A stretch of DNA of 64,000 bases from Mytilus californianus. Lineage: Eukaryota. Positions within the stretch are counted from its first letter, which is position 1. Each line of letters begins with the position of its first letter. The translations under genes and the position numbers were made by a program. The notes under the pieces are model-generated. The model was not told the DNA's origin. It made no database searches and worked only from the letters and a program-made list of their open reading frames with translations. The DNA is taken from the NCBI RefSeq assembly GCF_021869535.1, contig NW_026262675.1, positions 2,728,001 to 2,792,000 of the forward strand, written 5' to 3'. Below, one piece after another: positions 9,701 to 26,465 of this stretch.

Positions 9701-10915
9701 GGTATAGATAAACAACTCAACAAGCAGATGGACAAAAGGATCACTATATATATAGCTTCTTCAACTTGGCTATAAGAAAATAAATTTTATCAGTGTTACA
9801 AAAGAATGAAAATCAAATACGAGTCATCCTTTTTCATAAACACAGATACTGAGATCTTAATGTCACAAGTTTAGCAATCGAGTGTAATCCTACAACCTTT
9901 TAACTGTGCATAGATTTAACTTATTCAACCCCATATTGACATTTGAAACCATCTTTTTCAGAAAGAAAATTCAAATGTAGCTGATACATTTTAATTCACT
10001 TTTTTATTTGTTTTGCGCTAAAAGTAAGTACACAAAAAATATTATAAATCTATTTAGACAATGAAATGTCTCTGTCCTAGAAAATATAAACAACTTCTGG
10101 TTAACAGATTAGACTAAAATGGGAAATCAGAAAAGTAGTCATAGTTATGCTTTGAAAACTTATTTATTTAAATTTAACGTAATTTGATTGAAATACAAAT
10201 CCTGAGTCCGTCCTTCACTTAAAAGGATCTGACAATGTTCTGCTTTACTTTCTGTTTTAAAGACCTTTCGGGATCCTCTGGTTTTGTTGTTCGTAAATTT
10301 GAAGGCTGAAAATTCATTAGCTGATGTTATAATTATAATAAGGGAAAGTAGAACAGTATGACTGCAGAGTTCTTGAAAACTGTCAGTTCTGTCTGTCCTG
10401 ATCTCAAAAACTCAGTCACATCAACCAATTTTGAGTGTAATGGTGTCCATGTTAAAGTTTGTGGTTGTTTTATTCGTATTTAGGCTTATTCGTATTTAGC
10501 ATAGCTTATAATTACAATGTATATCAATATCTGATTTAAATACATATAACATATTTAAATTCAAAAAAAAATATTACTTAAAGGAGAACAATGATACAGG
10601 GATTACATATTATAATGTAGTTTTCATTCAATACATCAGAGCAAATTAAGCAAGAAAAGCATCGAAACATCATGGTATATAAAAAATGAGGAATTGCTTT
10701 TGGTTGTTTTGTTACTTACAGTTTTTTGTAACCATATGAATGAGATTTCTGAGATCCAGGGGAGACAACTCTTGCTTATCTCCATAACACCAAGCATAGG
10801 CTTAAAACTGTAAAAAAATATATAAGAAATTCAATAAAATGGAATTAGGGACATAGGAATATATACCCAGAATGTTAAAAATGCAAGGCTTCAAAAAATA
10901 GAATAGTTCTTAAAC

Positions 10916-11061
10916 TTTTTATGCCCCTGTCGTAGCGGAGGGGGCATTAAGTTTTACCCTTGTCCCTCTGTACGTCCGTACGTATGTCCCAAAATTGGTT
11001 TCCGTTCTCTAACTTTAGTTTGCCTCGACCAAATGTTATGAAACTTATACACAATGCTTAT
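10916..11061 (+). mobile_element. Truncated 5' part of HINE family B
   Basis: TTTTTATGCCCC start, (CGTA/CGTC) microsatellite and first part of the core unit; clearly homologous to 31782-32225. Confidence 0.75.
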
Positions 11062-13436
11062 TTGTTGAGTATTTAATATTCTATAAAACCAAATCAAAAT
11101 CATAATCTGTCAACATACTTGAAACTGTTTTTACATTGAAAGTTCTTTCACCTTCCATATGAATAAAAGACGATGGTCATATGAAAATGCCCCTACCAGC
11201 TTGGGATAGAATTTTCTTTGATAATTATATTTTTTTTATTTTGGCATCGAATTAAAATAACTTATTTTAGGAAAAGTGTTCCATTACCTGATATTCAGTA
11301 CCACTATTTTAATAGTTTGCTTTTGACCCTTCAATCAATAGTATATTTATGTGAGTAAGTGGAGCTTAGCAAGATTGGTGTCTGCATCCTCATTAAACGA
11401 GTTAAAGCATTTTAGGAAAGGAATCATAATTGCAGTTCAATCCTAAATAAATACTTAAGCATTGTCATCTGCTTTAAATAAAAATGTCACATAAAGCCAG
11501 AATTCTTCTTCACTTTCATGCTATAAACTAAATAATAGAGATGTTGAGATGGGGGATGTATTAAGTTTAGTTTTGTTCATGCTGATTAAGCTTCTGTCTG
11601 AGCCCATTGTGGTCTGTTTTTAGCAATGACACAGTTTAAACTGTAAACCTCTAAATGGTTTCCTGCAGTGGATTATGTGGCATTTCAGAATACAGGAAAC
11701 AGTTCTAGTTTTTCATTGCTCAGCCTCTGCAAAATGAAAGCTCAACAATTTTGTGCTCATTATTTTGTGTGTATGGATTCAAAGAAATGTTTCACAAAGT
11801 AAAAAAAACTTGATTTTTGTTTTTTACTAAATGGTACTATATAAATCCTTGGTAAATGTAATGATGGTATATGACAATTCATGACAAGATTACACTAATC
11901 TAGTCATAAAATACTTATTTTAGTAAGATTTCGACAACTGTTACCTTGTATTTATAGCTATTTGTTTAAACCAGTGATGGGACGAATGGCGATAAGACGG
12001 TTCAACCTGTTATGTAGGGATCCACCTAAAGAAATTTTTTTCGTCATCAGTTCCAACCACATATGTTCTTCAAGCGATTATTAAATAAAGATTTACTAGT
12101 TTGTTTAACCAGATGGATGCTGGGTCATTTTACAGATTTAAACAAGATAAATTAGACAAGCCGTTACTGAGTCGTTACTGAAATATAAATATTTAGTTCA
12201 AATTGAAACAATTTTTTAAAGAAAATTTGATAAAACGAATAGAAATTGAAGAATGCCAACTGAACATGTGAGCTGTAAAATCTAGAAAATGGTCAAGAAT
12301 TATATGACTATATAAGTTTGTTTTATCCAACTTCAATAATCATGTAAGAAACCTTTTGAAAACTGGATAATTACTTTTAACTGAATCATATAAAGATTGA
12401 TTGATTATTGGTTGCTTAACATCCAGTGGCAAATATTTCATGCATGTTCAGGACGAAATCATATAAAGATAGAAAGGGCCTGTTTAAATTGTGTTATACA
12501 TGTTATAGGATATGTAGGAGACATCTTTTGAGAATACAAAAACAGTATTTTTTTCTCAAAGACTAGAAAGGTTAATAATAGCATGAAATGTATGTTCATA
12601 TGCATTTACATTCAAGGTGCAATACAAGGAAATTACTGAGAAAGAGATGTATTCTAATTTGCATTCACAAAACACAAATTATAAGCAGGTTCATGTCCCC
12701 CCTCCTACATTTATATAGATATATGACAAAGCTAGAATGCTGTGCTGTGTAAAACAACATACAATTTTGGGTACAGATGACTATCTAGGGTTTGAAAACC
12801 ACCCTCTATTCATGCATTAATCTATGGGGAAATCCCTACCCATTCTTACATTTGAAAAGAAAATTACAACCCAATCAAAATGTAAATATATATTTCCCAG
12901 CTAAAATGACATCTTATTTAGACGTTAACCACATGAAATCCATGAAATCGTTCATTTTTATTAGATAAATAGATTATGAAACAGTTTTGACAGACATCTT
13001 AACAAAAGATGAACATTAAAGAACCATGGACATATAAATGTCTACCCATTGTTATATTTGACATTCCAAAAAAAGTTACCCATACCAGCGGCACATCTTT
13101 GTATATAACTTTATATAGGAAGAGACACCCTTCCTTTATAAGTCTATAATATAGTTATTGATATTTTAACTGAAAAGGATAAACCATCTACCAGTCACCG
13201 ACATCGGTCGTTACAGCTATTTTCTTATTTTCTTTAAGAAACCCCACTACTGAAGAAGAATATAATACACCTTTAATATCGCTATTTGTTCGCCATTATT
13301 GGACATCACAAAAGTTCTCGTAAAATGTTGACGTCATCATAGAAAATGTCTGACGCCACAATGGAAAAGTGATTGTTGTATGAAGTTAATAGTTCAAGAG
13401 GCGCAGATTCTCGGGTCAAGCGGCGCAGATTACCAA

Positions 13437-13470
13437 CAGAGACATATAATACATGTATTATATGTCTCTG
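13437..13470. mobile_element. Micro-MITE copy 1 (34-bp perfect palindrome, TIR CAGAGACATAT)
   Basis: CAGAGACATATAATACATGTATTATATGTCTCTG flanked by TTACCAA at 13430-13436 and 13471-13477 (7-bp direct repeat). Confidence 0.85.
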
Positions 13471-13721
13471 TTACCAAATAGCGTCCCTGAAAACGTTATG
13501 ACAATTCTGACTATGGTGGCGGGAAGTTGGATCTTTCATTCGGTTTTTATGATGCTGCATCCATTTTTTATGTAGGCTACCACTTGAATTTGTACATGTC
13601 CTTTTGGCTACCACTTGAATTTGTCCACAGGCACAGGTCGTTTTACAACTTTAGGGACTCTAGAAGGTAGGGGACAGTAACATGAGATGTGTGTTTAAAT
13701 TTCAGTCTGAATAAATCGAGT

Positions 13722-16044
13722 GCGCCAATGTATTTGTTCGAATTGAACGTTTTTTTATATATCAGGAAATCGATTTCTTGATATAAAAAAATAAAGAATA
13801 TTTTCTGATATCAAAAATTCATTTTTTTTTATCTCAAAAATTCTCAATTTTTGATATCAGGAAATCAATTTTTTTATATCAGAAATTCGAATTTTTGATA
13901 TCAGAAAATAAGAAATAAATGAATGATGGCGCTCTGTGTGTCAATAAAAGCACCCAAACTCACCCATGAGCCCAAACATCAGGAAATATCTGAAATAATG
14001 TATCCGGTAGACCAATTGTTTTATAATGTGGAGTACCGCCACACGATATTGGTATGATGGCAAAGGGTCCCTTGTTACAAAAACAAAATGTTTATACACT
14101 TCAAGTTTTATAAAAACGATTTAGACTTCAAAGTCTCCAGAAAACTGCTATTTTTATAACAATATTTGAAGCAAAAAACATGTACACTAATCTTCAGTTT
14201 GACGAAACTTAACGAGTACTGAATTACCTCGATCCAACTAATTACGAAATTCGAGTCCCATGCACTAAAAGACAATATATTGAAGATTTTTGAAATTATT
14301 CTAAAATATAACACATCTACTTTTGCGTCGAACAATCCCAATCGGCGGAATTAGTCGACCTAAAAATTTACTAAATACTGGATTTTTTTTTACAAAGCTT
14401 GACACATCGAAACAAAATACTGATGTGTTCAAGATTTAGATACGATGGCTGGATGATATATTAAGGTTCAACTGACGTAATACACGATTTTTTCGCCTTA
14501 TATGTCTAATACAATGCATACCCCCTATAATTGTACATACCAATTTTCTCAAAATGAAGTGTAACTTTCTTTACAATCGTTTTGATACAAAGACCAACGC
14601 TTCAAAAATGAAGGTATTTTAGAAATGAAAACGCACATCAAACTACTGAAACTTTTCAATACTTCACAGAAAAAGCTCATATAAAATAAATGTATTTAAA
14701 GGATATATGCAAGGCGCGGTACATAAGAAATACTAGCAGTCTTTCAAAAAAAACGTCTGGTAAAAAGACGAAATAGACGAAGTATTTGAAAATACAAGAC
14801 ATGCATTTTTTTTTATTTGTTGTTATTGGCTTTGAACTAGCCGTCAGTAACTGAGAGTACTATCACATCTGTACTTTGTGTCTTTTTGTTGTTGTTACCC
14901 TGCCACGTCCGATCTGTGTTTTTGTTAGCTGTTTTTCTTCTTTGTATCGATCTGATGAGCTAAGCCATTTTCAACTGATTTTTATAGTTTGTTCTTACAC
15001 TATGTTGTGATGTAACACCAGTGTCCCATGTTAGGGTTTAATCCCGCCACATTCTTTATGTGTCTGTCCCAAGTCAGAAGCCTGTAGTTCAGTAATTGTC
15101 GTTGGTTCATGTCTATCATATTTGTTTTTCGTAATATGTTTTGTTATAAATTAGGCCGTTAGCTTTCTAAACTGAATTGTTTCATATTTTTCATGTCGGT
15201 GCCTTTTATAGCCGACTATACGGTATTGGGTTTTCTTATTGTTGAAGGCCGTACGGTTGCCTATAATTACTTACATCCACTACATTTAAACTTTGGTGGA
15301 TAGTTGTCTCATTGGCAATCATACCACATCTCCTTATTTTATACTAAACAGAACTAACTGACTTACTAAATTCGCAACATAAACAACGGGGAAAAAAAAA
15401 CTAAAAACAAGATTACCAAAACACTGGGGCTTTATTTCACAAAAACCTGGCTGCACAAATCTGTTTCAGAGGAAACAGGAAAAGAAACGGGAACTTACAA
15501 TTGTTGACTATTAACCTTAATTAATACGTGAGAAACACAAACACACAAAACTTCTTATGACTGATGAAGCCGAACTCTGAGATGTTCTTTCCTTAAACAC
15601 CAGACCTAACGTTAGGGCTCATGGTTGAGCTCTGATGCTTTTATTGACACACAGGAAGCAATCATTGATATTTTTCTTACTTTCTGATATCAAAATATAA
15701 TTTCTTGATATCAGGAATTCGAATTTTTGATATAAAAAAAAAATCATTTTTTGATATCAGAAAATGTATTTCTTGATATCAAATAATCGTCAGTATTAAT
15801 TGATATCAGAAAATCTATTTTTGATATCATAAAATGGATTTCTTGATATCAAAAAATGATTTTTTGATATAAAAAAATCGAATTTCTGATATCAAGAAAT
15901 AAAGATTATTTTCTGATATCAAGAAATCGAATTCCTGATATAAAAAAGGGATTTTTTGATATAAAAAAATTCACTCGATTCCTGATATCAAGAAACATTT
16001 TTTGATATCAGAAAATAAGGAATAAATAGTAAAACAGTGCCTCA
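13722..16044. mobile_element. Foldback-like element with GATATC-array arms
   Basis: GATATC-rich arrays at 13750-13915 and 15665-16010. The junction GATATCAGAAA..TGTGTGTCAATAAAAGCA..CCATGAGCCC (13900-13980) recurs inverted at 15611-15690. Outer termini match only weakly. Confidence 0.55.
14808..15345. repeat. Interspersed repeat (family ending GATAGTTGTCTCATTGGCAATCATACCACATC)
   Basis: The same terminal block occurs at ~59120-59222 and inverted at ~1808-1860; class not determined. Confidence 0.6.
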
Positions 16045-16303
16045 CACACCTGTTTATAGTGTTCGTTTTGAACATGTTTTATGTATTAGCATTCACTCAA
16101 CACGTGTATAGAATTTCGTAATCCATATTGGCATTCGAAGTCGGTGATTTGCTGACGACCGAAATCGACGAGCTTTGGATAACGGTAAACCATCGAGTTA
16201 GAGTTCGAGTTAATGTTACTTAGGATCCTCCCGCTATTTATTTAAATGCAATATATCAACATGAAAGGTAAATATCCGCATATTTTCAAATGATCATACA
16301 AGC

Positions 16304-16331
16304 CAGAGACATATGTGTATATATGTCTCTG
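16304..16331. mobile_element. Micro-MITE copy 2 (28 bp)
   Basis: CAGAGACATAT-GTGTAT-ATATGTCTCTG flanked by TACAAGC at 16297-16303 and 16332-16338. Confidence 0.85.
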
Positions 16332-16361
16332 TACAAGCAGATAAAATCGGAGAACTTGTAT

Positions 16362-16389
16362 TATAGTATAGTATAGTATAGTATAGTAT
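16362..16389. repeat. (TATAG)5 microsatellite
   Basis: Read directly. Confidence 0.9.
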
Positions 16390-16852
16390 CGTTGTTTTGT
16401 CCCTATGCCAGATTCCCCCCGTTATCCTGTGAAAAAAATCTATTGATAGTAATCTGAACGTGATTAGATTAGAAGCTTCTTTGTAACAGTAAAGTACAGG
16501 TCGGTTGGGGTTTAACAATAACACTGATTCCATTTAAGAGCTATGCCCGTTGAAAATTGGTAAACCTTCATATTTTTGTTCGTAGACTTCTATCAAAAAA
16601 TCTGGAGAAGTGTAAATATTTCATTTGATTAGTAACACTCGTGAAATAGTGTATACTTTTCTTGACTGAGTTTTCGAACTGTCAAATAATAATGTTAAGA
16701 ATAACTTAATATTGAATATTGCTTAAATTTTGGGTACAATTATTTATTCGTGCTTATAATAAAAAGTAATAAATTCTCAGTTATCCTCTCTGTAAATTGA
16801 AAATCACTTGTATTGAACTATTGATTGTTGTTCAGTTTTGTTTTCTGTTTCG

Positions 16853-16985
16853 GTTTTATAACCCGATCACGACAGTATGGAGTATTATTTCTACGGTTTG
16901 TACGTGTGTGCGTGCGTCCGTCCGTTCGTCCGTTTGTCTGTCATTCCTTCCGCTCATCCGTCCGTCCTCCCTGTATCAGATTAAG
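16853..16985 (+). repeat. HINE-like 5' fragment with (CGTC)n microsatellite
   Basis: TTTTATAACCCG start followed by GTGCGTCCGTCCGTTCGTCCG tract; rest missing. Confidence 0.45.
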
Positions 16986-17558
16986 GTTTTGATTTGAAAA
17001 AGTTAACAAATTTTGGTGTTCTTGCCATTAACATTGAATTATAACACATTGATTCCTCATTTATAAACCGTTTTCTCAACCGTTACTTCCAATACATTTA
17101 ATATCCTTTTGTCGGTCAACTGTTTGACTTACAGTATCCCTAGTATATACCCCATGCAGAGTAAACTAAAACAACTGCCGTCGGGGCAAATACCCATGTT
17201 CAAAAATCTCAATGAAGTGGAACATCAAGGCATCCATATGCTCATCTGTATATAAGATACAACATTATACAAAAGAATTATGCACTTGCAATTTACAATG
17301 CAAAATATCTTGCTATGACCAAGATATGCGTTGAAGCAAATAAAAAGGAAGTTATTCTGATAAAAAAAAAATCAAACGACATTTTGCCACTGCTTTCAGA
17401 GTCGGACAAGATGTGATTTTATTTAAAAGACATAATAAGGGAATCTCGATGAACCCGTCATCCTTTACCCTTAATAGAAGGATGAATTAATTAGTAATGT
17501 CCCGAGTGTCAAATATTACATTCATATTAGGACGAGAACATATTTATGTTATTTAAGA

Positions 17559-17667
17559 ATTGAATGCTTCTTTTTGTAAATTTATTGGGGTGTAAAAGCG
17601 TTGACCGAAGTACATTTTGTATGAACGCTTTTACAACCCTTTAAAATTACTAAAAGAAGCATTCAAT
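17559..17667. repeat. Imperfect long hairpin inside an interspersed repeat
   Basis: Arms ATTGAATGCTTCTTTT..TGTAAAAGCGTT / AACGCTTTTACA..AAAAGAAGCATTCAAT. Confidence 0.75.
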
Positions 17668-17869
17668 ACTTATAATAACACAGTTTTTTTGCTAGGATCA
17701 TGAAAATACGATTTATGTCAAGTTTTTCTTTTATTTACCTGTGCACTTTATTGTGGAAGCTCGTGTCATTATGAATGTTACATTTCATTTTGAAATGAAA
17801 GTTAATGATTTCAGAATGACGCGAGATTGCTGTTAGCCAATCAAAATACCGTATTATACTGAAACATAC

Positions 17870-18100
17870 ATGTAATGTAACTATATGAATATGAACCCCA
17901 CACAATGCTTTGTACTGAACTGACACGCTGAGTCGGATCTTTAAACTGTCAGATGGGAAACATGTCATTCTACCTGCACACATTATTCTGACTACTTGTC
18001 GACCAGTCTTTGCTCGTACTCCTAAATGCCATCTTCTTAGCGGAAACGCAGCAAATATCAATTTTGAAGTCTTTGGTTTGACACGCGCAGAGCACACCAA
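17870..18100 (-). mobile_element. tRNA-derived SINE remnant (bivalve Meta/MD-type), head truncated
   Basis: On -: GTCAAACCAAAGACTTCAAAATTGATATTTGCTGCG..CCGCTAAG..GAGCAAAGACTGG core, recognised from memory of bivalve SINEs; not database-verified. Confidence 0.55.
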
Positions 18101-18535
18101 CAGCCAAAGGGGCCATCACCACTCAAAGGAGTCTTCAATATATGCAAGATCGTTTGTAATGAAATAAACGCAGCAAAATATCCTTCATATATTTAAGTTA
18201 TCGTACAATATCTTATGTTTACATACGTTTTGAAGCTTCATTATAAGTTGAACTTGAGGTATTGCGCTATTGCTCACGAAAAGGATACCGTCGCCCGTAA
18301 CAAAGTATATTATTTGCTACGGGAATTCGTAATATGACAAAAGAGAACCATTAACGAGGTACTTTTCTTGTGTTCATGTGGTTTAATAAGTTTCTAAAGA
18401 TAGACAGGATAATCATATATGTAGATTATACTATTTCTAATAGAATCATTATAGTTGCCATCCTTTCCTATATTTAGTATTGAGGCTCATATATCCTATT
18501 CTAGTTTTAATTTTGATTCTGTTTTAATGAAACAT

Positions 18536-19084
18536 GAGGGTGGTAAAGGGGGGGGGTCTGAACACGGAAACACTTGAAATAAAAATCGCAAAAACGTTGC
18601 ACGGAAAATAAAAATCGGGAAAAACGAAGCACGAGAAATAAAATCGTAAATATTAAGGAAAAAGGTACTAGAAGTTATTACTCAACCGTCCATAGTGATC
18701 ATGCAGTCATTATTAATGGACATGAAGACCCTGCGGTCACCTTTTAGCGTCCGCTAGTTGAATTTGATTTGAAAAAATATTATTCATAGTAATTTGATGG
18801 ACTTTATTACATACCATACATATACAATAGAATTGCAAAAGTAGAATGGTAACAGTATACATCAAGTTCTGTTAGATTACACAAGTTTTACCTTTTAGTG
18901 AAATGCGGTGCAAGCACGAGAAATTAAGAGTTCCGACACGAAACACGGAACATAAATAAGGGGAAACACGAAGCACGCACATCGAACCAAACACGAGAAA
19001 ACGAGAAATAAAACGTCAAAACACGATAACAAGTAAAATAAAAAGGCCGAAAACGTTGCACGAAAATAATCCTTTACCACCCTC
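18536..19084. mobile_element. 549-bp TIR MITE
   Basis: 14-bp TIR GAGGGTGGTAAAGG / CCTTTACCACCCTC; AAACAT direct repeat at 18530-18535 and 19085-19090; many CACG(G/A)AAA subterminal motifs. Confidence 0.85.
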
Positions 19085-19244
19085 AAACATCGTTTGCGTC
19101 TCAAACTGTATTTCTAACAAGAAATTTAACCCTAGCCCCAATTAAAATTCTTACTCGAAACTTCATCATTTGGTATTGCGCGTAAAGGATGATAGTTTTA
19201 TCGAAGTTCTGGATCTGCGATTGAAATACGACCTCAAGTTAAAA

Positions 19245-19420
19245 AACTCGAATTCTACCTCGAATTTTAACTCTTACTTTAATAACTCGAACTATAGAAG
19301 TTTGATTCGAACTGTAACTCGAAACGCAACTTAAGCTCGAATTCAAAGCTTAACTCCAACTTAAGACTCGAACTTCAAATCAAACTCGAAATCTATGGTT
19401 AGCTAGAATCGAAATCGACG
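19245..19420. repeat. Degenerate short-period repeat of (A)CTCGAA
   Basis: About ten CTCGAA/TTCGAA motifs spaced ~12-25 bp apart. Confidence 0.6.
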
Positions 19421-20539
19421 GGGGCCACGCAAACAAAAATTAGTCTTACTATTCGAAATAGGGATACTAAATATGAAGTTAATATCCCTTAGTTGAGGCG
19501 ATCTTCAAGGGCTATGGCGTTTTCTTTCTGTTTGTTCTCTTTAACAGTTTGTGTCTGCTTAGAAGTTAATGTACGTTAGCTGTTTAACCAACTGACCGGT
19601 GCAGAAACTGTTTACCCATCAGGGGCACTAAAGTTTATACTGAGTTTTGTTTAAGTGTTTGTATTTTTAATGTCGTGCTGTTTTTCTGTGTAATAATCTT
19701 GTCTTATTCTTTGTCCTAAAAACTGCATTGTAATTTCACACTTTCATATCATGTCAAGTTTCAGGGTTAGAAAATTGACATGATCGTTTGTTTATGAATT
19801 AACGGTAATGTCTTAGGTTTAGAAAACAGACACATGCAAACCCGCTGTCATACAGTGCGTAATCACCAGTGACCTAATATACGTATTTTTTCTTCAAACC
19901 ATGAGTGACACGATGGGTGTCACAGGTGGAACAGGAACTGGTGACCCTTCTTATGTCCCTTAGTTCGTTCCCGGTTTAATGCTGGGTTTATAATGCTCAA
20001 TCTTTTGTTTTATAGATTATTGTTTGTCTCTTCGTCTTGAAGTGTTCGTATTTTGCTTTTGACTATGTTATTTTATATTTTCCAGCGACAAATTAATAGA
20101 ATAGAGCAAAGTGAAAGAACTTATCCTAATTAAAACGATTGCAGGTGCTGCTGGAATGTTTCTACTTAAAACATTAAAGTCGCATTTGAATCATCACTTT
20201 TGTCATAGACGATTTTGGTTGTTTTGTTTAGGTCCATCAGGTTTTTATATCGTAAATGTTTAATGTATATAAAATGGCTTCCTAAACATCTAAATTGTTT
20301 GTTTTGGTGACAAATTTTGTACGCACTTAGTTTTGTTCTATTCATTTATATTCTGCGTAAATTTGAGTTTTACTTAAATACTTTCACCAGCATCTGATGA
20401 CTGACCAAATTCGAAAATAACATATTTTGGTTCCTTACTGTTATTTTTAATAAATGTCAAATGTAATATGTGATAATAAAGTTACTTCTGAATTAAGAAA
20501 TAAAACAGAAATGATATTTGTTAAAATATAAAAAAGTGC

Positions 20540-20545
20540 TTTATT
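20540..20545 (-). terminator. Polyadenylation signal AATAAA of the minus-strand TM gene
   Basis: TTTATT on +, ~80 nt downstream of the stop codon at 20625. Confidence 0.55.
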
Positions 20546-20624
20546 GAAACCTAAGAGAGACAGAAACACAGACCTGCTGCGATACATCAAGTGACTTAAC
20601 AGAAAAACGTAGTTATAAATCTAA

Positions 20625-21295
20625 TTAGTTCCAATCTATACTCTCCCCGTCATCTTGATACGTCTCAATTACATCATCATCATCTACGCCATAGCCTGTT
20701 GTCGCAGACCTAGGGTTTGATTGCGGCTGAGATGACCTAAATGTACTTAACGGATTTGATTCTGTGTCGGGTTTAATACTTCTAGAAAAATCACTATGAT
20801 AACCAATATCATCAGCAGTGTCTTCACGATTTTGTCTGTTAATGGTGTTAATTCTTTCCCTTTGCGAACTACTGTTGTGCGAGTTCATACTTCCCATGTA
20901 ACTATCTGGTGTCTCACTGGTTGAATGTGTTCTTGCTTGGGTATTCGGTTGTACATTCTGAAACCTTCCACCAGAAAATCGTAGTTCGCTGTTTACATTT
21001 TCATTTTGATAACTCGTAGATGCTTTATTTGTGTTATCCTCCACAACCGATATTGATGTGTTCTTTTTTACATCTGTTGTGCCGGTGGATTGATGTTCTA
21101 ATGACCCTTTTCTGTCGTCGAGTTCAGGCCAGTCATTTCTTTTTGGTTGAAGATTACTCGACTTATTGTTTATATCACTGTGTGCACTGGTTATATGTGC
21201 GTTGTTATTGCTACTCTGTTTTGAAAGCTCAATTTCTTGAAATGCATTTTTTTTCTTTTTTTCCGGGGATGTAATGGATTTTCGTTGAGTATTTC
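20625..21295 (-). CDS. Terminal exon of an uncharacterised single-pass membrane protein (S/T/N-rich disordered cytoplasmic tail)
   Basis: TTTTCTATTGCAG acceptor, phase 1, 671 nt open to TAA (GNTQRKS...ESIDWN); frame continuous with exon 21644-21793; polyA signal follows. Confidence 0.75.
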
Positions 21296-21643
21296 CTGCA
21301 ATAGAAAAAACGTAAAATGGTGTGCATTTATTCAAAATATCAGGTCGTATAAAAAATATAAATTTCGTATAAACAGAATCGTCGATTTCTAACGTATTTA
21401 AAAAATCCTGCTATCCTATATTACGTATCTTTGATTGTCCAGCACTGAATGTAAAATAGACTGAACAATTATTGTCCTCATCACCATAAGTTTAAGTTGT
21501 GCCCGAGTTACCTTTTAGCCTTTTTTTGTCTTGTTTATGTTTTTGCTTTTGTTATTTTTGTTTTACACCTATAAGATACTTTTAACTTCTTTTGAGCTAT
21601 ATTGGCTATACGACTTAAGCTTGGTAGTGCCCGGATGATTTAC

Positions 21644-21793
21644 CTGCATCATTGTGGTGCACATTGGATTCCCCTGCACACAACAGCACCAACGATATCA
21701 AAATTAAAACAGACAGAATACTAATCACAACAACTGATATCGTGTTGTCGGCTATAGCATACTCATCGCCACCGACATCTACTGCTGATACTC
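21644..21793 (-). CDS. Transmembrane exon of the same gene
   Basis: ATCTTTTCTAG acceptor and GTAAAT donor, 150 nt, phase 1-1; VSAVDVGGDEYAIADNT-ISVVVISILSVLILISLVLLCA-GESNVHHNDA contains one TM helix. Upstream exons not resolved. Confidence 0.7.
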
Positions 21794-23619
21794 CTAGAAA
21801 AGATAGTCAAAATGATGAAAATTAGATTGAAGGATGTCCTAAAAGCGTATGGGTATATTAAATTTAATGTTTTAATCTTGGATTATTGGCTTTATTCTCG
21901 TGTTCAAATTGTTTATGCCTTCAGGGGTCACATGAATGGAAAAAAAAACCCACAACATTGAACAATCATCATCGTCTTCTTCTATATAGCCAACTTTGGC
22001 TGGGAAAAACATTCGTCACTAACGTTTGCCACAATCAATCGGATAGTTATAACATTTGCATAATGATATCCTTTAATAAAACACACATAAATTATGAAGA
22101 CTCTTCTACATATTTGGTCGATAGATATATATGTACTTTAAACACACAGATATAATATAAACACTCGATTATCTTGAAATATCAACATGGTAACAAGATT
22201 AAGGTACTTAAAAAAATTGATGTACGGTCATTTTTGCAGAAAGATTTCAGATTTATGTACAAAAAGGGTGAACAAACAGAAAAAGCGAAAAAGAAACGAA
22301 ATTTGCGGATTTTTGTCTGGCTTATTCAAAGTTCGATCAGTATATCACACTAATTTACTTTTGAAAGTTCTTACCAGACCCAAGCACAATAAATCCACAA
22401 AAAGCAAGTAAAAGGGTAGTTCTGTCATACATTTCCACTGGAAACCATTACTTTGTCAATATTTTGTGCATTTTAAATGACGATTGATTTTTCTCTCTAT
22501 GTTACACAACTGTACGTTAAACCATTTAAAGAATGAAGATTAAAGGCAGCCAATTCAATAGTCTATACATGTAGGTACATAAAAATGTTTAAACGGTATG
22601 TGTGGTAGGTATACACTCGTTATAACATTGATAAACAATAGTTGACTGTATATATATGGTAATACGAAATTTAAATTAGAGAGAAAATTTACCGGACTTA
22701 AATTGTGGTACATCTTCTCTGGGAAGAGGATATATCCCAAATCTTCCTTCAATAAAAGTCAAGTCTTCAACAAAAGAATTGCACAATTTATAGTGTCCGC
22801 AAAAGACATTTGTCTCGTACTTCCATCAGTTTTTATCATGAATCAATTCGGGTTTATATCAATTTTAGGATTCCGCAAAATAAACTAAAGTGATATCTAT
22901 ATATTAAGCTATAGGCACAGCCTTGTAACATGGCGAGAAATTCCAGTTGCAGTAGACGTAAAAAGGTAATAGTCAAATAACTATAAGATAAAGTCAAATA
23001 AAAGATGAACATGCACTAAAACGGGACTCGCACTAAAGCAAGTGGGTGTTGATCTTTTACAATAATACTGTTTAACACTCTCCAATCGACACAGATGTGG
23101 TGTATGTCACCTCTTCCTTTTAGATCATCATCGAAAATAACCACTTAAATTTTGTAGGTCCTGTGATGAGGAAAGCGTATTCTCGTATTTAGAGAGTAAT
23201 ACGATCAATTTCATCTCATATCAATGAACAAGTTTTAGCTTTAACTTATATGGATTCGTATAAGTAAACGGATATATATGTAAACTCAGAGTATTTTTTT
23301 ATGTAATTAAATGGTTGCTTTCCCAAAATAAAACACAAATATATTTTCCTTCCTGAAAGAATCCATGGATGAGAGTTAACATGAATAAAATGCGGTATAT
23401 ATGTCGTTTTCAAGTTATCATTTGGTAAAAATTATAATTTGTATTATATACTTTGTACAAATTGTAGTTTGTCCAAATTACTAATTGTTGAAAATTTGAC
23501 TAAAATTCACTTATAACTTGTACCATAATTTATAATATGTATTTGTTAAAAAAAATGATTGATACACAATATAGAATTTTATTTGACCACACAAAAAAAA
23601 ATAAAAAACTAGTTCTGTA

Positions 23620-24110
23620 TCATTTGTTTGAGCATGTGAGTGAAATATGGCATCGGGAATTGTACGCTGACATCTTTTGATGTCTACATTTACATTAACA
23701 AGTGCTGCATTTGAATGAAAGAGACGCCTGACCACCAGTTTTTGTAAACTTTTTAACTGCTTCAGGCAGCAAAAGTTAAAGCCCAGGAACCGCTGCTGCG
23801 AATAAACATGTGTCTTTAACAGCTTCGATTTGACTGATTTCTAGACAAATACCCTGTTTAAATTCCTACAGCTGTTCCAATGCGATACCCATAAATCCAG
23901 ATACAACAATTACGCTTAAGTTGGGTCACGATCATACTGAGGAATAGGTATGATGACATTATCCCCCACAGCAAGTTTTGATAGTTTTCGTTTTGTTTTC
24001 TTGGTAAGATATTCGGATGCAATCTGTTGGCCAGACAGCGCACGCTTCCTGGCACGTATGATCGGTGTTTTAATGCCATGCAGTGTCATCCTGGTTGTCA
24101 CTGGGACCAA
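23620..24110 (-). pseudogene. Decayed C-terminus of an integrase-type DNA transposase (KRBA2/SCAND3-like, Ginger/GIN-related)
   Basis: Across frames: RKRALSGQQIASEYL..LAVGDNVIIPIPQYDR; YRIGTAVGI; LPEAVKKFTKTGGQ..C*CKC..NSRCHISLTCSNK*. These match the recalled tail of invertebrate KRBA2-like integrases. Stops and frameshifts present. A possible HGG zinc-binding remnant (SHGGVYKTFEEM) lies near 24440-24475. Confidence 0.65.
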
Positions 24111-24911
24111 TGTCTATTGTAATATCAGAATTAACAGGCATATATGTATCAATTACATTTCCTGTCTCCGTCTGGGTATATTATTCTGATCATGGAAGTA
24201 GTATATTGTCAATATAATACTTCCATGTTAAATTCTGATTCAGTCGATTCAGTTTCTGTTTCTGTATTATCATCAGGATCATCTACTTCTCTAATTCTAA
24301 TAATGAAAAGTAAATTTCTCAATAATAAAAAAACAATACTAAGAGACAACGGGATAGCTGACACAGAACCACTAAACGGTTCCGCAACTTGCAAGGAAGC
24401 TATTGAAACATCGGGTCTTCACGGAAAGACGAAGTCATCTCCTCGAAAGTTTTGTAGACACCACCATGACTTGGCCCTTGGCGTTATGGAATATCAGACT
24501 GTATCGCAGATGTATGACTACGAATATATTGCATATGTTGTAGCACCAATTTCGTTCTCTTTTCCTCTCTTGTGACATTGCCAGATACTATTTATCATCA
24601 TATATTTGTATAACGTAGTGGCACAGGAATTTCTTATCCGGAGCACTTGAATTCATCCCTGTTTTAAAGGGGTTCGTGTTGCCCAGTATTTGATTTTCTG
24701 TGTAATGTTTTGGAATGTTGATACGTTAGTCGATCGTCTATTTTTCCTTTGGCAATGGTCATGGTGATGTTGTCTCTCTTTCACAGACTTATTTGTTTAT
24801 TGCCTCTTGGTGTATTCTTACTTTTTAGGGGCGGACAGGGACATTTATTTATATCTATCATAGGCATACTATTGATATATTAAGGTAAATAAGGTTTTTT
24901 TCAGATACAAG

Positions 24912-25012
24912 TCAATCTAATTAAAATATAGATCTCGAATTTCGTTATACTACGTTATACTACATATAACGTAGTATAACGAAATCCGAGATCTATATTT
25001 TAATTAGATTGA
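24912..25012. mobile_element. 101-bp hairpin mini-MITE
   Basis: 48-bp arms with one mismatch and a 5-nt loop; GATACAAG direct repeat at 24904-24911 and 25013-25020. Confidence 0.85.
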
Positions 25013-25358
25013 GATACAAGTGTCTGTGATATTTATATAAACGCGCGGTTGGGTTTACTGTTTCTTTTTTGGCAGCAAACTAAAAACCTCATATTCTCTT
25101 GTTCAGTTGAAAAATAATCAATAAAGTAAAATAGGATTTTTGTTGGTAAAATCCTTGTTCATGGAATATTTACACTTACCTGCTTCCCAACGGATAGCCA
25201 AAGAATGCTCGTGGTCACTTGAAACATACTCAAACTACTATGACATTACAGTCACATTCGTACCGTAAACGTTTTTTAATTGTTGCTTTAAAATGGTATA
25301 TGTGTTGCTATGTTTTGCATCTTCTGCAGCAATAAACGAAAAACAAAATTAACAAATA

Positions 25359-25676
25359 CACTGTAAAAGTCGTGCTTAGAAATTAAACACTTGTATTAAA
25401 TGTTTAGATCTAAATGTGTTTAGGATTTTGTTTAATTTCTAAACACATTTCTCAGTAAGCACATAATATCTAAACATGTCTTGAATTTAAACACTTTTAA
25501 TGTGTTAAAAAATGAAAGTGTTTAGAAATTAAACACTTTTTCTAAGCTAAACACGATTCTAAACACAATCCTAAACACATTGTACTGAGACACGTTTAGA
25601 TCTAAACATGTAAAAAAAAGTGCACAAAAGATGTGCTTAGAAATGTGTTTAGGATCTAAACACCATTTTTACAGTG
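25359..25676. mobile_element. 318-bp MITE with CACTG termini (CMC/EnSpm-type or Tc1-like)
   Basis: TIR CACTGTAAAA / TTTTACAGTG, TA on both flanks, internal (T)AAACAC/GTGTTT(A) motif array. Confidence 0.8.
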
Positions 25677-25879
25677 TAGACAGCAAACAACTTGACCAAC
25701 AATAACCACTGGGTTATATAGAGGCTTTGGAACGTTGGACTATCAATCCCCGACTTCGATACTGACATTATGGCAAGCCGTTTTACTATTTATTCGAACT
25801 TCAAGATATCTCATATAATGTATAAGATATCTTATGTAATCTAGTTTTTATAAGATATCTTATAAACTTTATAGAAGAT

Positions 25880-26043
25880 TAGAGGCGGATTTAGAGGGTT
25901 TTTCAGGGGGCCCGGCTCCCCCCCCCCCTTTGTGGGAAAAATTTGGTTGATTATATTGGGAATCACTGAAGCATGACTGGAGCGGGCCCCCTCTTAAGCA
26001 GTCAGAGGGCCCCCTCTTATGAAAATTTCTGGTTCCGCCACTG
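25880..26043. mobile_element. GC-rich MITE nested in the foldback element
   Basis: Ends TAGAGGCGGATTTAG / CTGGTTCCGCCACTG; AAGAT on both flanks. Confidence 0.7.
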
Positions 26044-26050
26044 AAGATAT

Positions 26051-26087
26051 CTGGGACTATTATCCTATGTAAGTATAATAGTCCCAG
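26051..26087. mobile_element. 37-bp palindromic micro-insertion (second type)
   Basis: 13-bp arms CTGGGACTATTAT / ATAATAGTCCCAG; flanks AAGATAT / AAAATAT (6/7 match). Confidence 0.5.
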
Positions 26088-26378
26088 AAAATATCTCATA
26101 TAGTCTATAAGATATCTTATATATGCTTTATACTTTATAAGATATCTTCTAAAGTTTATAAGATATCTTCTAAAGTTTATAAGATATCTTATAAAGTATA
26201 TAAGATATCTTATAAATATTTTTTATATAAGATATCTTATATACTTTATACTTTATAAGATATCTTCTAAAGTTTATAAGATATCTTATAAAGTTTATAA
26301 GATATCTTATAAAGTATATAAGATATCTTATATACTTTATAAGATATCTCATATTTTATAACATATCTTAAGCTTATA

Positions 26379-26416
26379 CAGAGACATATATACACATATA
26401 TGTATATATGTCTCTG
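26379..26416. mobile_element. Micro-MITE copy 3 (38 bp)
   Basis: 16-bp arms CAGAGACATATATACA, 6-nt loop; GCTTATA at 26372-26378 and 26417-26423. Confidence 0.85.
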
Positions 26417-26465
26417 GCTTATACAGAAAATTATATGATATATCTTATAAATTATATCACGAAGA

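What the first reader, a model, noticed from the sequence alone, without database searches (positions are those of the whole stretch)
13430..26423. Family of 28-38 bp palindromic micro-transposons, each with its own perfect 7-bp TSD
Seen: three copies (13437-13470, 16304-16331, 26379-26416) consist only of an 11-16 bp TIR starting CAGAGACATAT around a short AT spacer. Each is flanked by a different perfect 7-bp direct repeat (TTACCAA, TACAAGC, GCTTATA), and two targets share GCTTRTA when oriented. Two copies sit inside other repeats, so an empty site can be inferred. Known: MITEs are usually well over 50 bp, and 7-bp TSDs with CA- termini are features of some P-superfamily elements such as Galileo. 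Inference: either these are among the smallest mobilised DNA units, or they are scars left when a larger element collapsed by recombination between inner TA tracts.
Basis: partly seen in the sequence, partly recalled or inferred. Interest (0 to 1): 0.78.

Follow-up and report, generated by a model that had tools for sequence, protein, structure and literature searches.

The report
Transposon excision scars in mussel DNA
Three tiny palindromes in this mussel DNA are most likely scars left where a cut-and-paste jumping gene once sat and then cut itself out, and their constant 17-letter arms show how that gene's enzyme cuts DNA.

Summary
There are three palindromes of 34, 28 and 38 bp starting CAGAGACATAT, each between a different perfect 7-bp direct repeat. 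I found nine more copies of the family: eight in AT-rich marine metagenome contigs and one in Mytilus galloprovincialis. Nine of the twelve have perfect 7-bp duplications. None of 231 chance matches in prokaryotic or viral DNA does.

The "micro-transposon" reading is not supported. All twelve copies differ at the centre. The arms come in two end variants that differ by a 1-nt indel, and both stop at exactly 17 nt. Junctions are direct or hold 2-6 nt of filler. This is the anatomy of Drosophila P-element excision scars: both target duplications, up to 17 nt of each inverted repeat left by the 17-nt staggered cut, and end-joining filler.

Most likely (0.65) these are donor-site scars of a P-superfamily-like element. 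Copy 2 seems absent from two other individuals, so activity looks recent.

The main gap is that I found no long parent element with these ends in about 109 kb of Mytilus DNA.

The scan found the same thing before on other DNA of this genome (s1-287925, s1-333294). It is a new member of a known kind, of moderate interest.

The parts
13430..13436 (.). left copy of 7-bp target-site duplication TTACCAA of c1
13437..13470 (.). c1: 34-bp perfect palindrome, made of two 17-nt arms of end variant T1 (CAGAGACATATAATACA) joined directly
   Evidence: Contigs of three individuals include its right junction (table 8).
13471..13477 (.). right copy of TTACCAA
16297..16303 (.). left copy of 7-bp target-site duplication TACAAGC of c2
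16304..16331 (.). c2: 28 bp, an 11-nt left arm joined directly to a 17-nt right arm of end variant T2 (CAGAGACATATATACAC)
   Evidence: Contigs of X1, X4 and the related species X7 stop matching exactly at 16303, so the site is probably empty there.
16332..16338 (.). right copy of TACAAGC
26372..26378 (.). left copy of 7-bp target-site duplication GCTTATA of c3
26379..26416 (.). c3: 38 bp, a 17-nt T2 left arm, 4-5 nt of AT filler that repeats the adjacent arm, and a 16-17-nt right arm
26417..26423 (.). right copy of GCTTATA

Best explanation
These are donor-site excision scars (footprints) of a cut-and-paste DNA transposon of P-superfamily type, not mobile units.

Proposed sequence of events:
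1. A long element with ends CAGAGACATATA... inserted and made a 7-bp target duplication. The duplication is shown; the long element is inferred.
2. Its transposase later cut it out. It cut the 3' strand at the element/target boundary and the 5' strand 17 nt inside each end. Each flank therefore kept its duplication copy plus a 17-nt 3' tail of the inverted repeat. This step is inferred from the arm lengths.
3. Host end joining then joined the two tails, sometimes after nibbling a few nt or adding a few filler nt. The junction anatomy is shown; the pathway is inferred.

The product is duplication + up to 17 nt + 0-6 nt + up to 17 nt + duplication. It cannot move again.
For: 1. Real target duplications. 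3 of 3 window copies have them. So do 5 of 8 family copies in AT-rich metagenome contigs, plus one cut by a contig end but consistent. One Mytilus galloprovincialis copy (L262:14001-14043, CTAAAAC) has one too. Controls gave 0 of 231.

2. A ruler at 17 nt. Two end variants, T1 and T2, differ by a 1-nt indel at position 13. Even so, both end exactly 17 nt from the outer end. 11 of 24 arms match T1 or T2 over all 17 nt. Beyond 17 nt the letters differ between copies and simply follow the other arm or filler.

3. Independent origins. All 12 copies differ at the junction. Lengths are 22, 28, 30, 31, 32, 32, 32, 33, 34, 36, 38 and 43 bp. Five are direct joins of one full 17-nt arm to an arm of 11-17 nt. 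Others carry short AT-rich fillers or fillers that copy the arm (TA, ATATA, ATCTCT).

4. The same anatomy as experimental Drosophila P{wa} excision junctions. Those have an 8-bp duplication, up to 17 nt of each inverted repeat, then microhomology, a blunt join or a short templated insert (tables in PMC2895639). The 17-nt stagger is a distinguishing feature of P transposase (PMC7776569; PMC10983969).

5. 7-bp duplications occur in P-superfamily members such as Galileo (PMC4168063). P-type DDE sequences were among the 17 superfamilies that a survey reports from bivalves (PMC10294476).

6. Recent activity. c2 is probably absent from two other individuals and from a related species, while c1 is present in three individuals.
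Against: - No long element with these ends was found in the 64-kb window or in 45 kb of M. galloprovincialis and M. trossulus DNA, against four scars in the same DNA. Parents must therefore be rarer than scars, or gone.
- No transposase was tested, so 'P-superfamily' rests on the duplication length and the inferred cut.
- Read depth implies hundreds of copies with the very same 34-bp form. Depth is about 5,300 against about 7 for single-copy DNA in run X1. That could also come from amplification.
- A direct 17+17 join of non-complementary 3' tails is rare among the fly junctions.
- The sample is twelve copies, and the search pattern required 11-nt arms.
- The empty state of c2 is inferred from where contigs stop matching, not from their letters.
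Confidence: 0.65

Rival explanations
1. In-situ collapse without excision. A long element stayed at the site and lost its interior. This could happen by abortive gap repair (copying stops early from both ends and the ends are joined), by hairpin or palindrome instability of a foldback-type element, or by recombination between the TA tracts of the two inverted repeats. The last is the first reader's second option.
For: Both duplication copies and both ends are kept, as in internally deleted elements. The arms contain self-complementary TA tracts that could pair. One metagenome copy (L017, 11+11) is joined inside that tract. The fly literature describes incomplete synthesis followed by end joining. 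A 101-bp palindrome with an 8-bp direct repeat at 24912-25012 shows that ends-only remnants of other families exist here.
Against: Breakpoints from aborted synthesis or hairpin loss should scatter and often exceed 17 nt. Here no arm extends consistently beyond 17 nt, in two end variants offset by an indel. Most junctions lie outside the TA tract and show no microhomology.
Confidence: 0.15
2. True micro-MITEs. The 22-43 bp palindromes are themselves excised and reinserted by a transposase, each jump making a new 7-bp duplication.
For: Perfect duplications at every window copy. High copy number in two mussel species. Probable presence/absence polymorphism at c2. No long parent seen in about 109 kb.
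Against: A transposing family should show many near-identical copies, yet twelve of twelve copies differ at the centre. The units are far shorter than duplex DNA can bend to pair its two ends (my own knowledge). In Drosophila P the transposase binding sites lie inside the element, beyond the 31-bp inverted repeat, so a 34-bp unit would lack them (PMC7776569). With a 17-nt stagger a 17+17 unit would come out as two unpaired 17-mers (inference).
Confidence: 0.06
3. Chance palindromes or assembly artefacts.
For: The genome is AT-rich (31-36% G+C) and full of low-complexity repeats. Two metagenome copies lack duplications.
Against: Three perfect 7-bp flanking repeats have a joint chance of about 1e-13 (my estimate). 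Controls gave 0 of 231. Independent contigs of three individuals contain the c1 junction. The two copies without duplications sit in short, low-coverage metagenome contigs, where a repeated palindrome of about 32 bp can cause chimeric joins (inference).
Confidence: 0.01

Closest known systems
Drosophila P-element excision footprints (P{wa} end-joining junctions; PMC2895639)
   Same: Both target-duplication copies are kept. Up to 17 nt of each inverted repeat is kept. Junctions are direct joins or carry short, often templated, AT-rich inserts, and they vary between independent events.
   Different: The duplication is 7 bp, not 8. The end sequence is different. These are natural fossils in a bivalve, at hundreds to thousands of copies, rather than laboratory events. 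A direct 17+17 join seems common here but is rare in flies, where joins at AT/TA microhomology near the tips dominate.
Galileo and 1360 (P superfamily, Drosophila)
   Same: 7-bp target duplications and CA...TG ends.
   Different: Galileo has very long, internally repetitive inverted repeats and a GTANTAC target. No palindromic target motif was detectable here with 9 sites. No transposase has been linked.
MITEs (miniature inverted-repeat transposable elements)
   Same: Inverted ends, target duplications, high copy number, no coding capacity.
   Different: MITEs have internal sequence, are usually over 50 bp and form families of near-uniform length. These have no interior, are 22-43 bp and differ at every junction sampled.
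Tc1/mariner and Sleeping Beauty footprints
   Same: Scars that keep the duplication plus a few terminal nucleotides of each end, because the 5' cut is staggered.
   Different: Those retain only 2-3 nt per end, flanked by TA. Here it is 17 nt per end, flanked by 7 bp.
hAT elements
   Same: Ends beginning CAGAG are typical of many hAT elements (my own knowledge).
   Different: hAT makes 8-bp duplications. It excises through hairpins on the flanks, so its footprints carry no element ends. Both features disagree with what is seen.

Membership tests
P-superfamily transposon (as the parent of the scars) | 7-8 bp target-site duplication | tested here: met
   Exactly 7 bp in 9 of 9 copies that have a duplication. 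Galileo also makes 7 bp.
P-superfamily transposon (as the parent of the scars) | 5' strand cleaved 17 nt inside the inverted repeat | tested here: met
   Indirect. Arms stop at exactly 17 nt in two end variants offset by an indel; 11 of 24 arms are full-length and none is consistently longer. The reference value comes from PMC7776569.
P-superfamily transposon (as the parent of the scars) | Autonomous member encoding a THAP domain plus an RNase H-like domain with a GTP-binding insertion | not testable with these tools
   No long element with these ends in the window, L262 or L263. No transposase domain in any window ORF of 90 aa or more. The mussel genome could not be searched as a whole.
P-type excision footprint | Both duplication copies flank up to 17 nt of each end plus a short junction insert or a direct join | tested here: met
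   Arm and filler table compared with the published junction tables.
P-type excision footprint | The same site once held the full element | not testable with these tools
   This needs allelic or orthologous long copies. The orthologous regions of M. galloprovincialis and M. trossulus lack this DNA altogether. The single read-laying run showed only present versus probably empty.
MITE | Inverted ends and a target duplication | tested here: met
MITE | Family of copies with shared internal sequence and near-uniform length | tested here: not met
   No internal sequence. Twelve copies give twelve different junctions, 22-43 bp. Read depth does show many identical 34-mers, so recurrent identical products exist.
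hAT | 8-bp target duplication, and footprints without element ends | tested here: not met
   The duplication is 7 bp. The scars keep 11-17 nt of each end.
Tc1/mariner | TA target duplication | tested here: not met
   The 7-bp duplications are of varied sequence.

The most novel reading that the evidence does not exclude
The scars may themselves be substrates, spreading by ends-only, semi-conservative transposition.

A 17-nt staggered cut of a 17+17 palindrome would leave the two non-transferred 17-mers on the donor flanks, and these rejoin into the same scar. The two transferred 17-mers would be held together only by the transposase. They integrate 7 bp apart elsewhere, are filled in and are blunt-joined into a new 17+17 palindrome.

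This would be a copy-making route for units of about 34 bp. It would explain three things: the dominance of the exact 17+17 form, the excess of palindromes over long parents, and the arm limit of 17 nt.
Probability: 0.06. Interest if true: 0.85.

Novelty: new member of a known kind. Interest (0 to 1): 0.5.

Why it matters
If the scars are what they seem, the unusual 17-nt staggered cut has until now been mapped only for the Drosophila P transposase. It would also be used by a transposase in a mollusc, so it would be an old property of the superfamily.

The cut could then be read straight from genome sequence, without biochemistry.

Thousands of such scars would also be a natural record of two things in a non-model animal. 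One is how often and where this element jumped, including local hopping. The other is how mussel germ cells join broken ends.

They would also give polymorphic markers of recent transposon activity.

For annotation, such 36-52 bp units should not be counted as a MITE family.

Tried and rejected
- **Long parents in the window.** I looked for CAGAG...CTCTG pairs up to 8 kb apart. I also scanned for any 12-nt inverted ends with 5-9 bp duplications up to 15 kb apart. Only the three palindromes carried these ends. Searches for T1 and T2 with 3 mismatches gave only chance hits.
- **Public collections.** The metagenome scan gave the useful extra copies. The prokaryote-genome and viral scans gave only chance matches, which I used as the control. 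Two viral scans with the 17-mers gave 6 stray hits that I did not examine.
- **Orthologous sites.** I anchored on the 236-aa ORF at 20625-21335 and fetched the M. galloprovincialis and M. trossulus loci. The DNA holding c1-c3 has no counterpart there: window 10.8-20.5 kb corresponds to about 2.6 kb. No empty or long allele could be read.
- **Route to a mussel P-type transposase.** No ORF of 90 aa or more in the window, and none of the locus ORFs tested, has a transposase domain. I had no tool-given P transposase sequence to start from, and I did not type one from memory.
- **Palindromic target motif.** 20 of 63 symmetric positions were complementary, which is about chance. A GCT/AGC half-site at one end of 3 of my 10 duplications is suggestive only.
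- **Literature search for the end string.** It returned only unrelated papers.
- **Rfam on 10-30 kb.** Nothing.
Full report
**Observation**

- c1 (13437-13470) is a perfect 34-bp palindrome between two copies of TTACCAA.
- c2 (16304-16331, 28 bp) lies between two copies of TACAAGC.
- c3 (26379-26416, 38 bp) lies between two copies of GCTTATA.

The flanking repeat is exactly 7 bp. The 11-mer CAGAGACATAT occurs exactly only in these six arms of the 64-kb window. With one mismatch allowed there are 7 matches against 1.28 expected, and no shuffle reached 7.

As a control I collected 231 chance matches of CAGAGACA..TGTCTCTG in prokaryotic and viral contigs. None has a perfect 7-bp flanking repeat. 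The duplications are therefore real insertion signatures.

**Organism and setting**

Earlier notes of this scan call the genome the California mussel. In agreement, the 236-aa ORF at 20625-21335 is 84-85% identical to proteins of Mytilus galloprovincialis and M. trossulus.

The three copies lie in AT-rich non-coding DNA upstream and downstream of that gene. No ORF of 90 aa or more in the window has a transposase domain. Rfam finds nothing in 10-30 kb.

**More copies**

One scan of metagenome contigs with the gapped pattern gave 24 loci.
- The GC-rich ones are unrelated hairpins without duplications.
- The AT-rich ones (30-42% G+C) carry the same family. L011 shares other repeats with the window.
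- L001, L014 (first copy), L017, L021 and L024 have perfect 7-bp duplications.
- L011 is cut by the contig end but agrees for its 4 readable bases.
- L004 and the second L014 copy have no duplication. They sit in short, low-coverage contigs, where a repeated palindrome can cause chimeric joins (inference).

The M. galloprovincialis locus fetched as an orthologue holds a further 43-bp copy between two CTAAAAC (L262:14001-14043).

In total there are twelve copies. Nine have perfect duplications.

**Anatomy**

The arms come in two variants.
- T1 is CAGAGACATATAATACA.
- T2 is CAGAGACATATATACAC.

They differ by one extra A at position 13. Despite that offset, both stop exactly 17 nt from the outer end. 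Eleven of 24 arms match T1 or T2 over all 17 nt. Past position 17 the letters differ from copy to copy and are simply the other arm or filler.

If the arms descended from one master palindrome, the variant with the extra base should be 18 nt long. A ruler that measures 17 nt from the end explains both variants.

The twelve copies have twelve different junctions and lengths of 22-43 bp.
- Five are direct joins of one full arm to an arm of 11-17 nt: c1 17+17, c2 11+17, L001 14+17, L004 15+17, L024 17+15.
- Others hold 2-6 nt of filler that is AT-rich or repeats the arm: TA, ATATA in c3, ATCTCT in L262.

**Comparison with known chemistry**

P transposase cuts the 5' strand 17 nt inside the inverted repeat. 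This is described as unusual among cut-and-paste enzymes (PMC7776569; PMC10983969). Both the excised element and the donor flanks are left with 17-nt 3' tails.

The published tables of P{wa} donor-site junctions show the 8-bp duplication, up to 17 nt of each repeat, then a microhomology, a blunt join or a short templated insert, and the duplication again (PMC2895639). The mussel palindromes have this anatomy with a 7-bp duplication.

Seven-bp duplications occur in the P superfamily, for example in Galileo (PMC4168063). A survey that included P among its 17 DDE superfamilies reports that bivalves have at least one element of each (PMC10294476).

hAT, whose ends often begin CAGAG (my own knowledge), is excluded on two counts: its 8-bp duplication, and footprints that carry no element ends.

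**Reads (contigs of four public runs laid on 12500-17500)**

Depth at the centre of c1, compared with neighbouring single-copy contigs:

| Run group | Depth at c1 centre | Single-copy depth |
|---|---|---|
| Three runs of the same species | about 5,300, 42,700 and 4,200 | about 7, 33-46 and 5-6 |
| One run of a related species | about 96,600 | about 19-44 |

So c1-like palindromes number several hundred to about a thousand per genome here, and more in the relative.

The listed variants sit at the junction between the two arms:
- plus AT exactly between the two 17-nt arms: 18-23% in this species and 6% in the relative;
- minus 4 nt: about 3% and 21%.

c1's right junction is present in all three individuals, whose contigs start at 13444 or 13447.

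For c2, contigs of two other individuals and of the relative stop matching exactly at 16303, the last base of the left duplication. In the two individuals the same contig resumes at 16402 with 53 letters between instead of 98. The 45 missing letters are most simply the palindrome plus one duplication (35) and two TATAG units (10). The TATAG array is only 28 bp long, so it cannot account for 45.

I could not see the letters themselves, so 'empty site' is an inference. If it is right, c2 arose within this species and still segregates.

**Why not mobile units**

- A transposing family should show many near-identical copies. The pattern-based sample shows none.
- The units lack any interior. In Drosophila P the transposase binding sites lie beyond the 31-bp repeat.
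- With a 17-nt stagger, a 17+17 unit would be released as two unpaired 17-mers (inference).

**Why not simple collapse**

- Aborted repair synthesis or hairpin loss should give scattered arm lengths, many above 17 nt.
- Most junctions lie outside the TA tract and have no microhomology.

**Weak points**

- I found no long element with these ends in the window or in 45 kb of other Mytilus DNA, against four scars. Parents must be rarer than scars, which is possible if few elements jumped many times. Otherwise the palindromes spread in some other way.
- The many identical 34-mers, and the apparent dominance of a direct 17+17 join that is rare in flies, leave room for the ends-only, semi-conservative route described under the novel case.
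- The transposase is unidentified.
- The orthologous loci of M. galloprovincialis and M. trossulus lack the DNA that holds c1-c3, so they give no allelic series.
- A palindromic target motif was not detectable with nine sites.

**Earlier notes of this scan**

Earlier notes describe the same objects on other pieces of this genome.
- s1-287925 is a 17+17 palindrome between two gcttaag. It was followed up and read as an excision scar.
- s1-333294 describes four CAGAGACATATA palindromes with 7-bp duplications.
- s1-312207 mentions a P-like 4.9-kb element in this genome.

I could not inspect any of them, and they are not independent evidence.

**Verdict**

- The 'micro-transposon' reading is not supported.
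- The most likely explanation (0.65) is donor-site scars of a P-superfamily-like element cut with a 17-nt stagger and repaired by end joining.
- This is a new member of a known kind, of moderate interest.

Noticed in passing
window 24912-25012: A 101-bp near-perfect palindrome with arms of about 48 nt and ends TCAATCTAATTA...TAATTAGATTGA, flanked by a perfect 8-bp direct repeat GATACAAG. It is an ends-only remnant or foldback-type MITE of a different family. The 8-bp repeat suggests hAT.
   Followed up: partly
window 18536-19084: A 549-bp element with perfect 12-nt inverted ends GAGGGTGGTAAA and a 6-bp duplication AAACAT. It looks like the GAGGG...CCCTC MITE family noted elsewhere in this genome (s1-274933).
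   Followed up: no
window 14671-15505: A hyper-abundant repeat. Summed contig depth is 10^5 to 10^6 against about 7 for single-copy DNA, in both mussel species. There are many 'goes back' joints around 15290-15340, which suggests tandem or satellite-like organisation.
   Followed up: no
window 13335-13436: The left flank of c1 is itself a high-copy repeat (bin depth about 35,000 in X1), while the right flank is single-copy. c1 therefore sits at the edge of another repeated element. That repeat has no second copy in the window.
   Followed up: partly
window 10800-20470 versus L262:12453-15084: The intergenic DNA that holds c1 and c2 is 9.7 kb here but about 2.6 kb in M. galloprovincialis. The gap in M. 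trossulus (L263) is also only about 3 kb. This is a large lineage-specific or presence/absence block, yet contigs of a related species match parts of it at about 95%.
   Followed up: partly
window 20477-21335 (minus strand): A conserved Ser/Asn-rich ORF. It is the main exon of an uncharacterised 295-aa Mytilus protein (LOC134712136 in M. trossulus), 84-85% identical across species, with no Pfam family. It lies next to a DUF4735 gene, as in the other species.
   Followed up: partly
L010:1186-1330 (metagenome contig Ga0268261_10191089): A tandem array of a 20-bp unit that is itself a 10+10 palindrome, CAGAGACATATATGTCTCTG. The contig has 43% G+C and is probably from an unrelated organism. Its relation to the mussel family is unknown.
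   Followed up: no
window 16297-16338, 26372-26423; L024:972-1017: Three of ten duplications carry GCT at one end or AGC at the other (GCTTATA, TACAAGC, ATACAGC), as does the gcttaag of note s1-287925. This may be a half-site of a GCTNAGC-like target preference. It is a post hoc observation on a small sample.
   Followed up: partly
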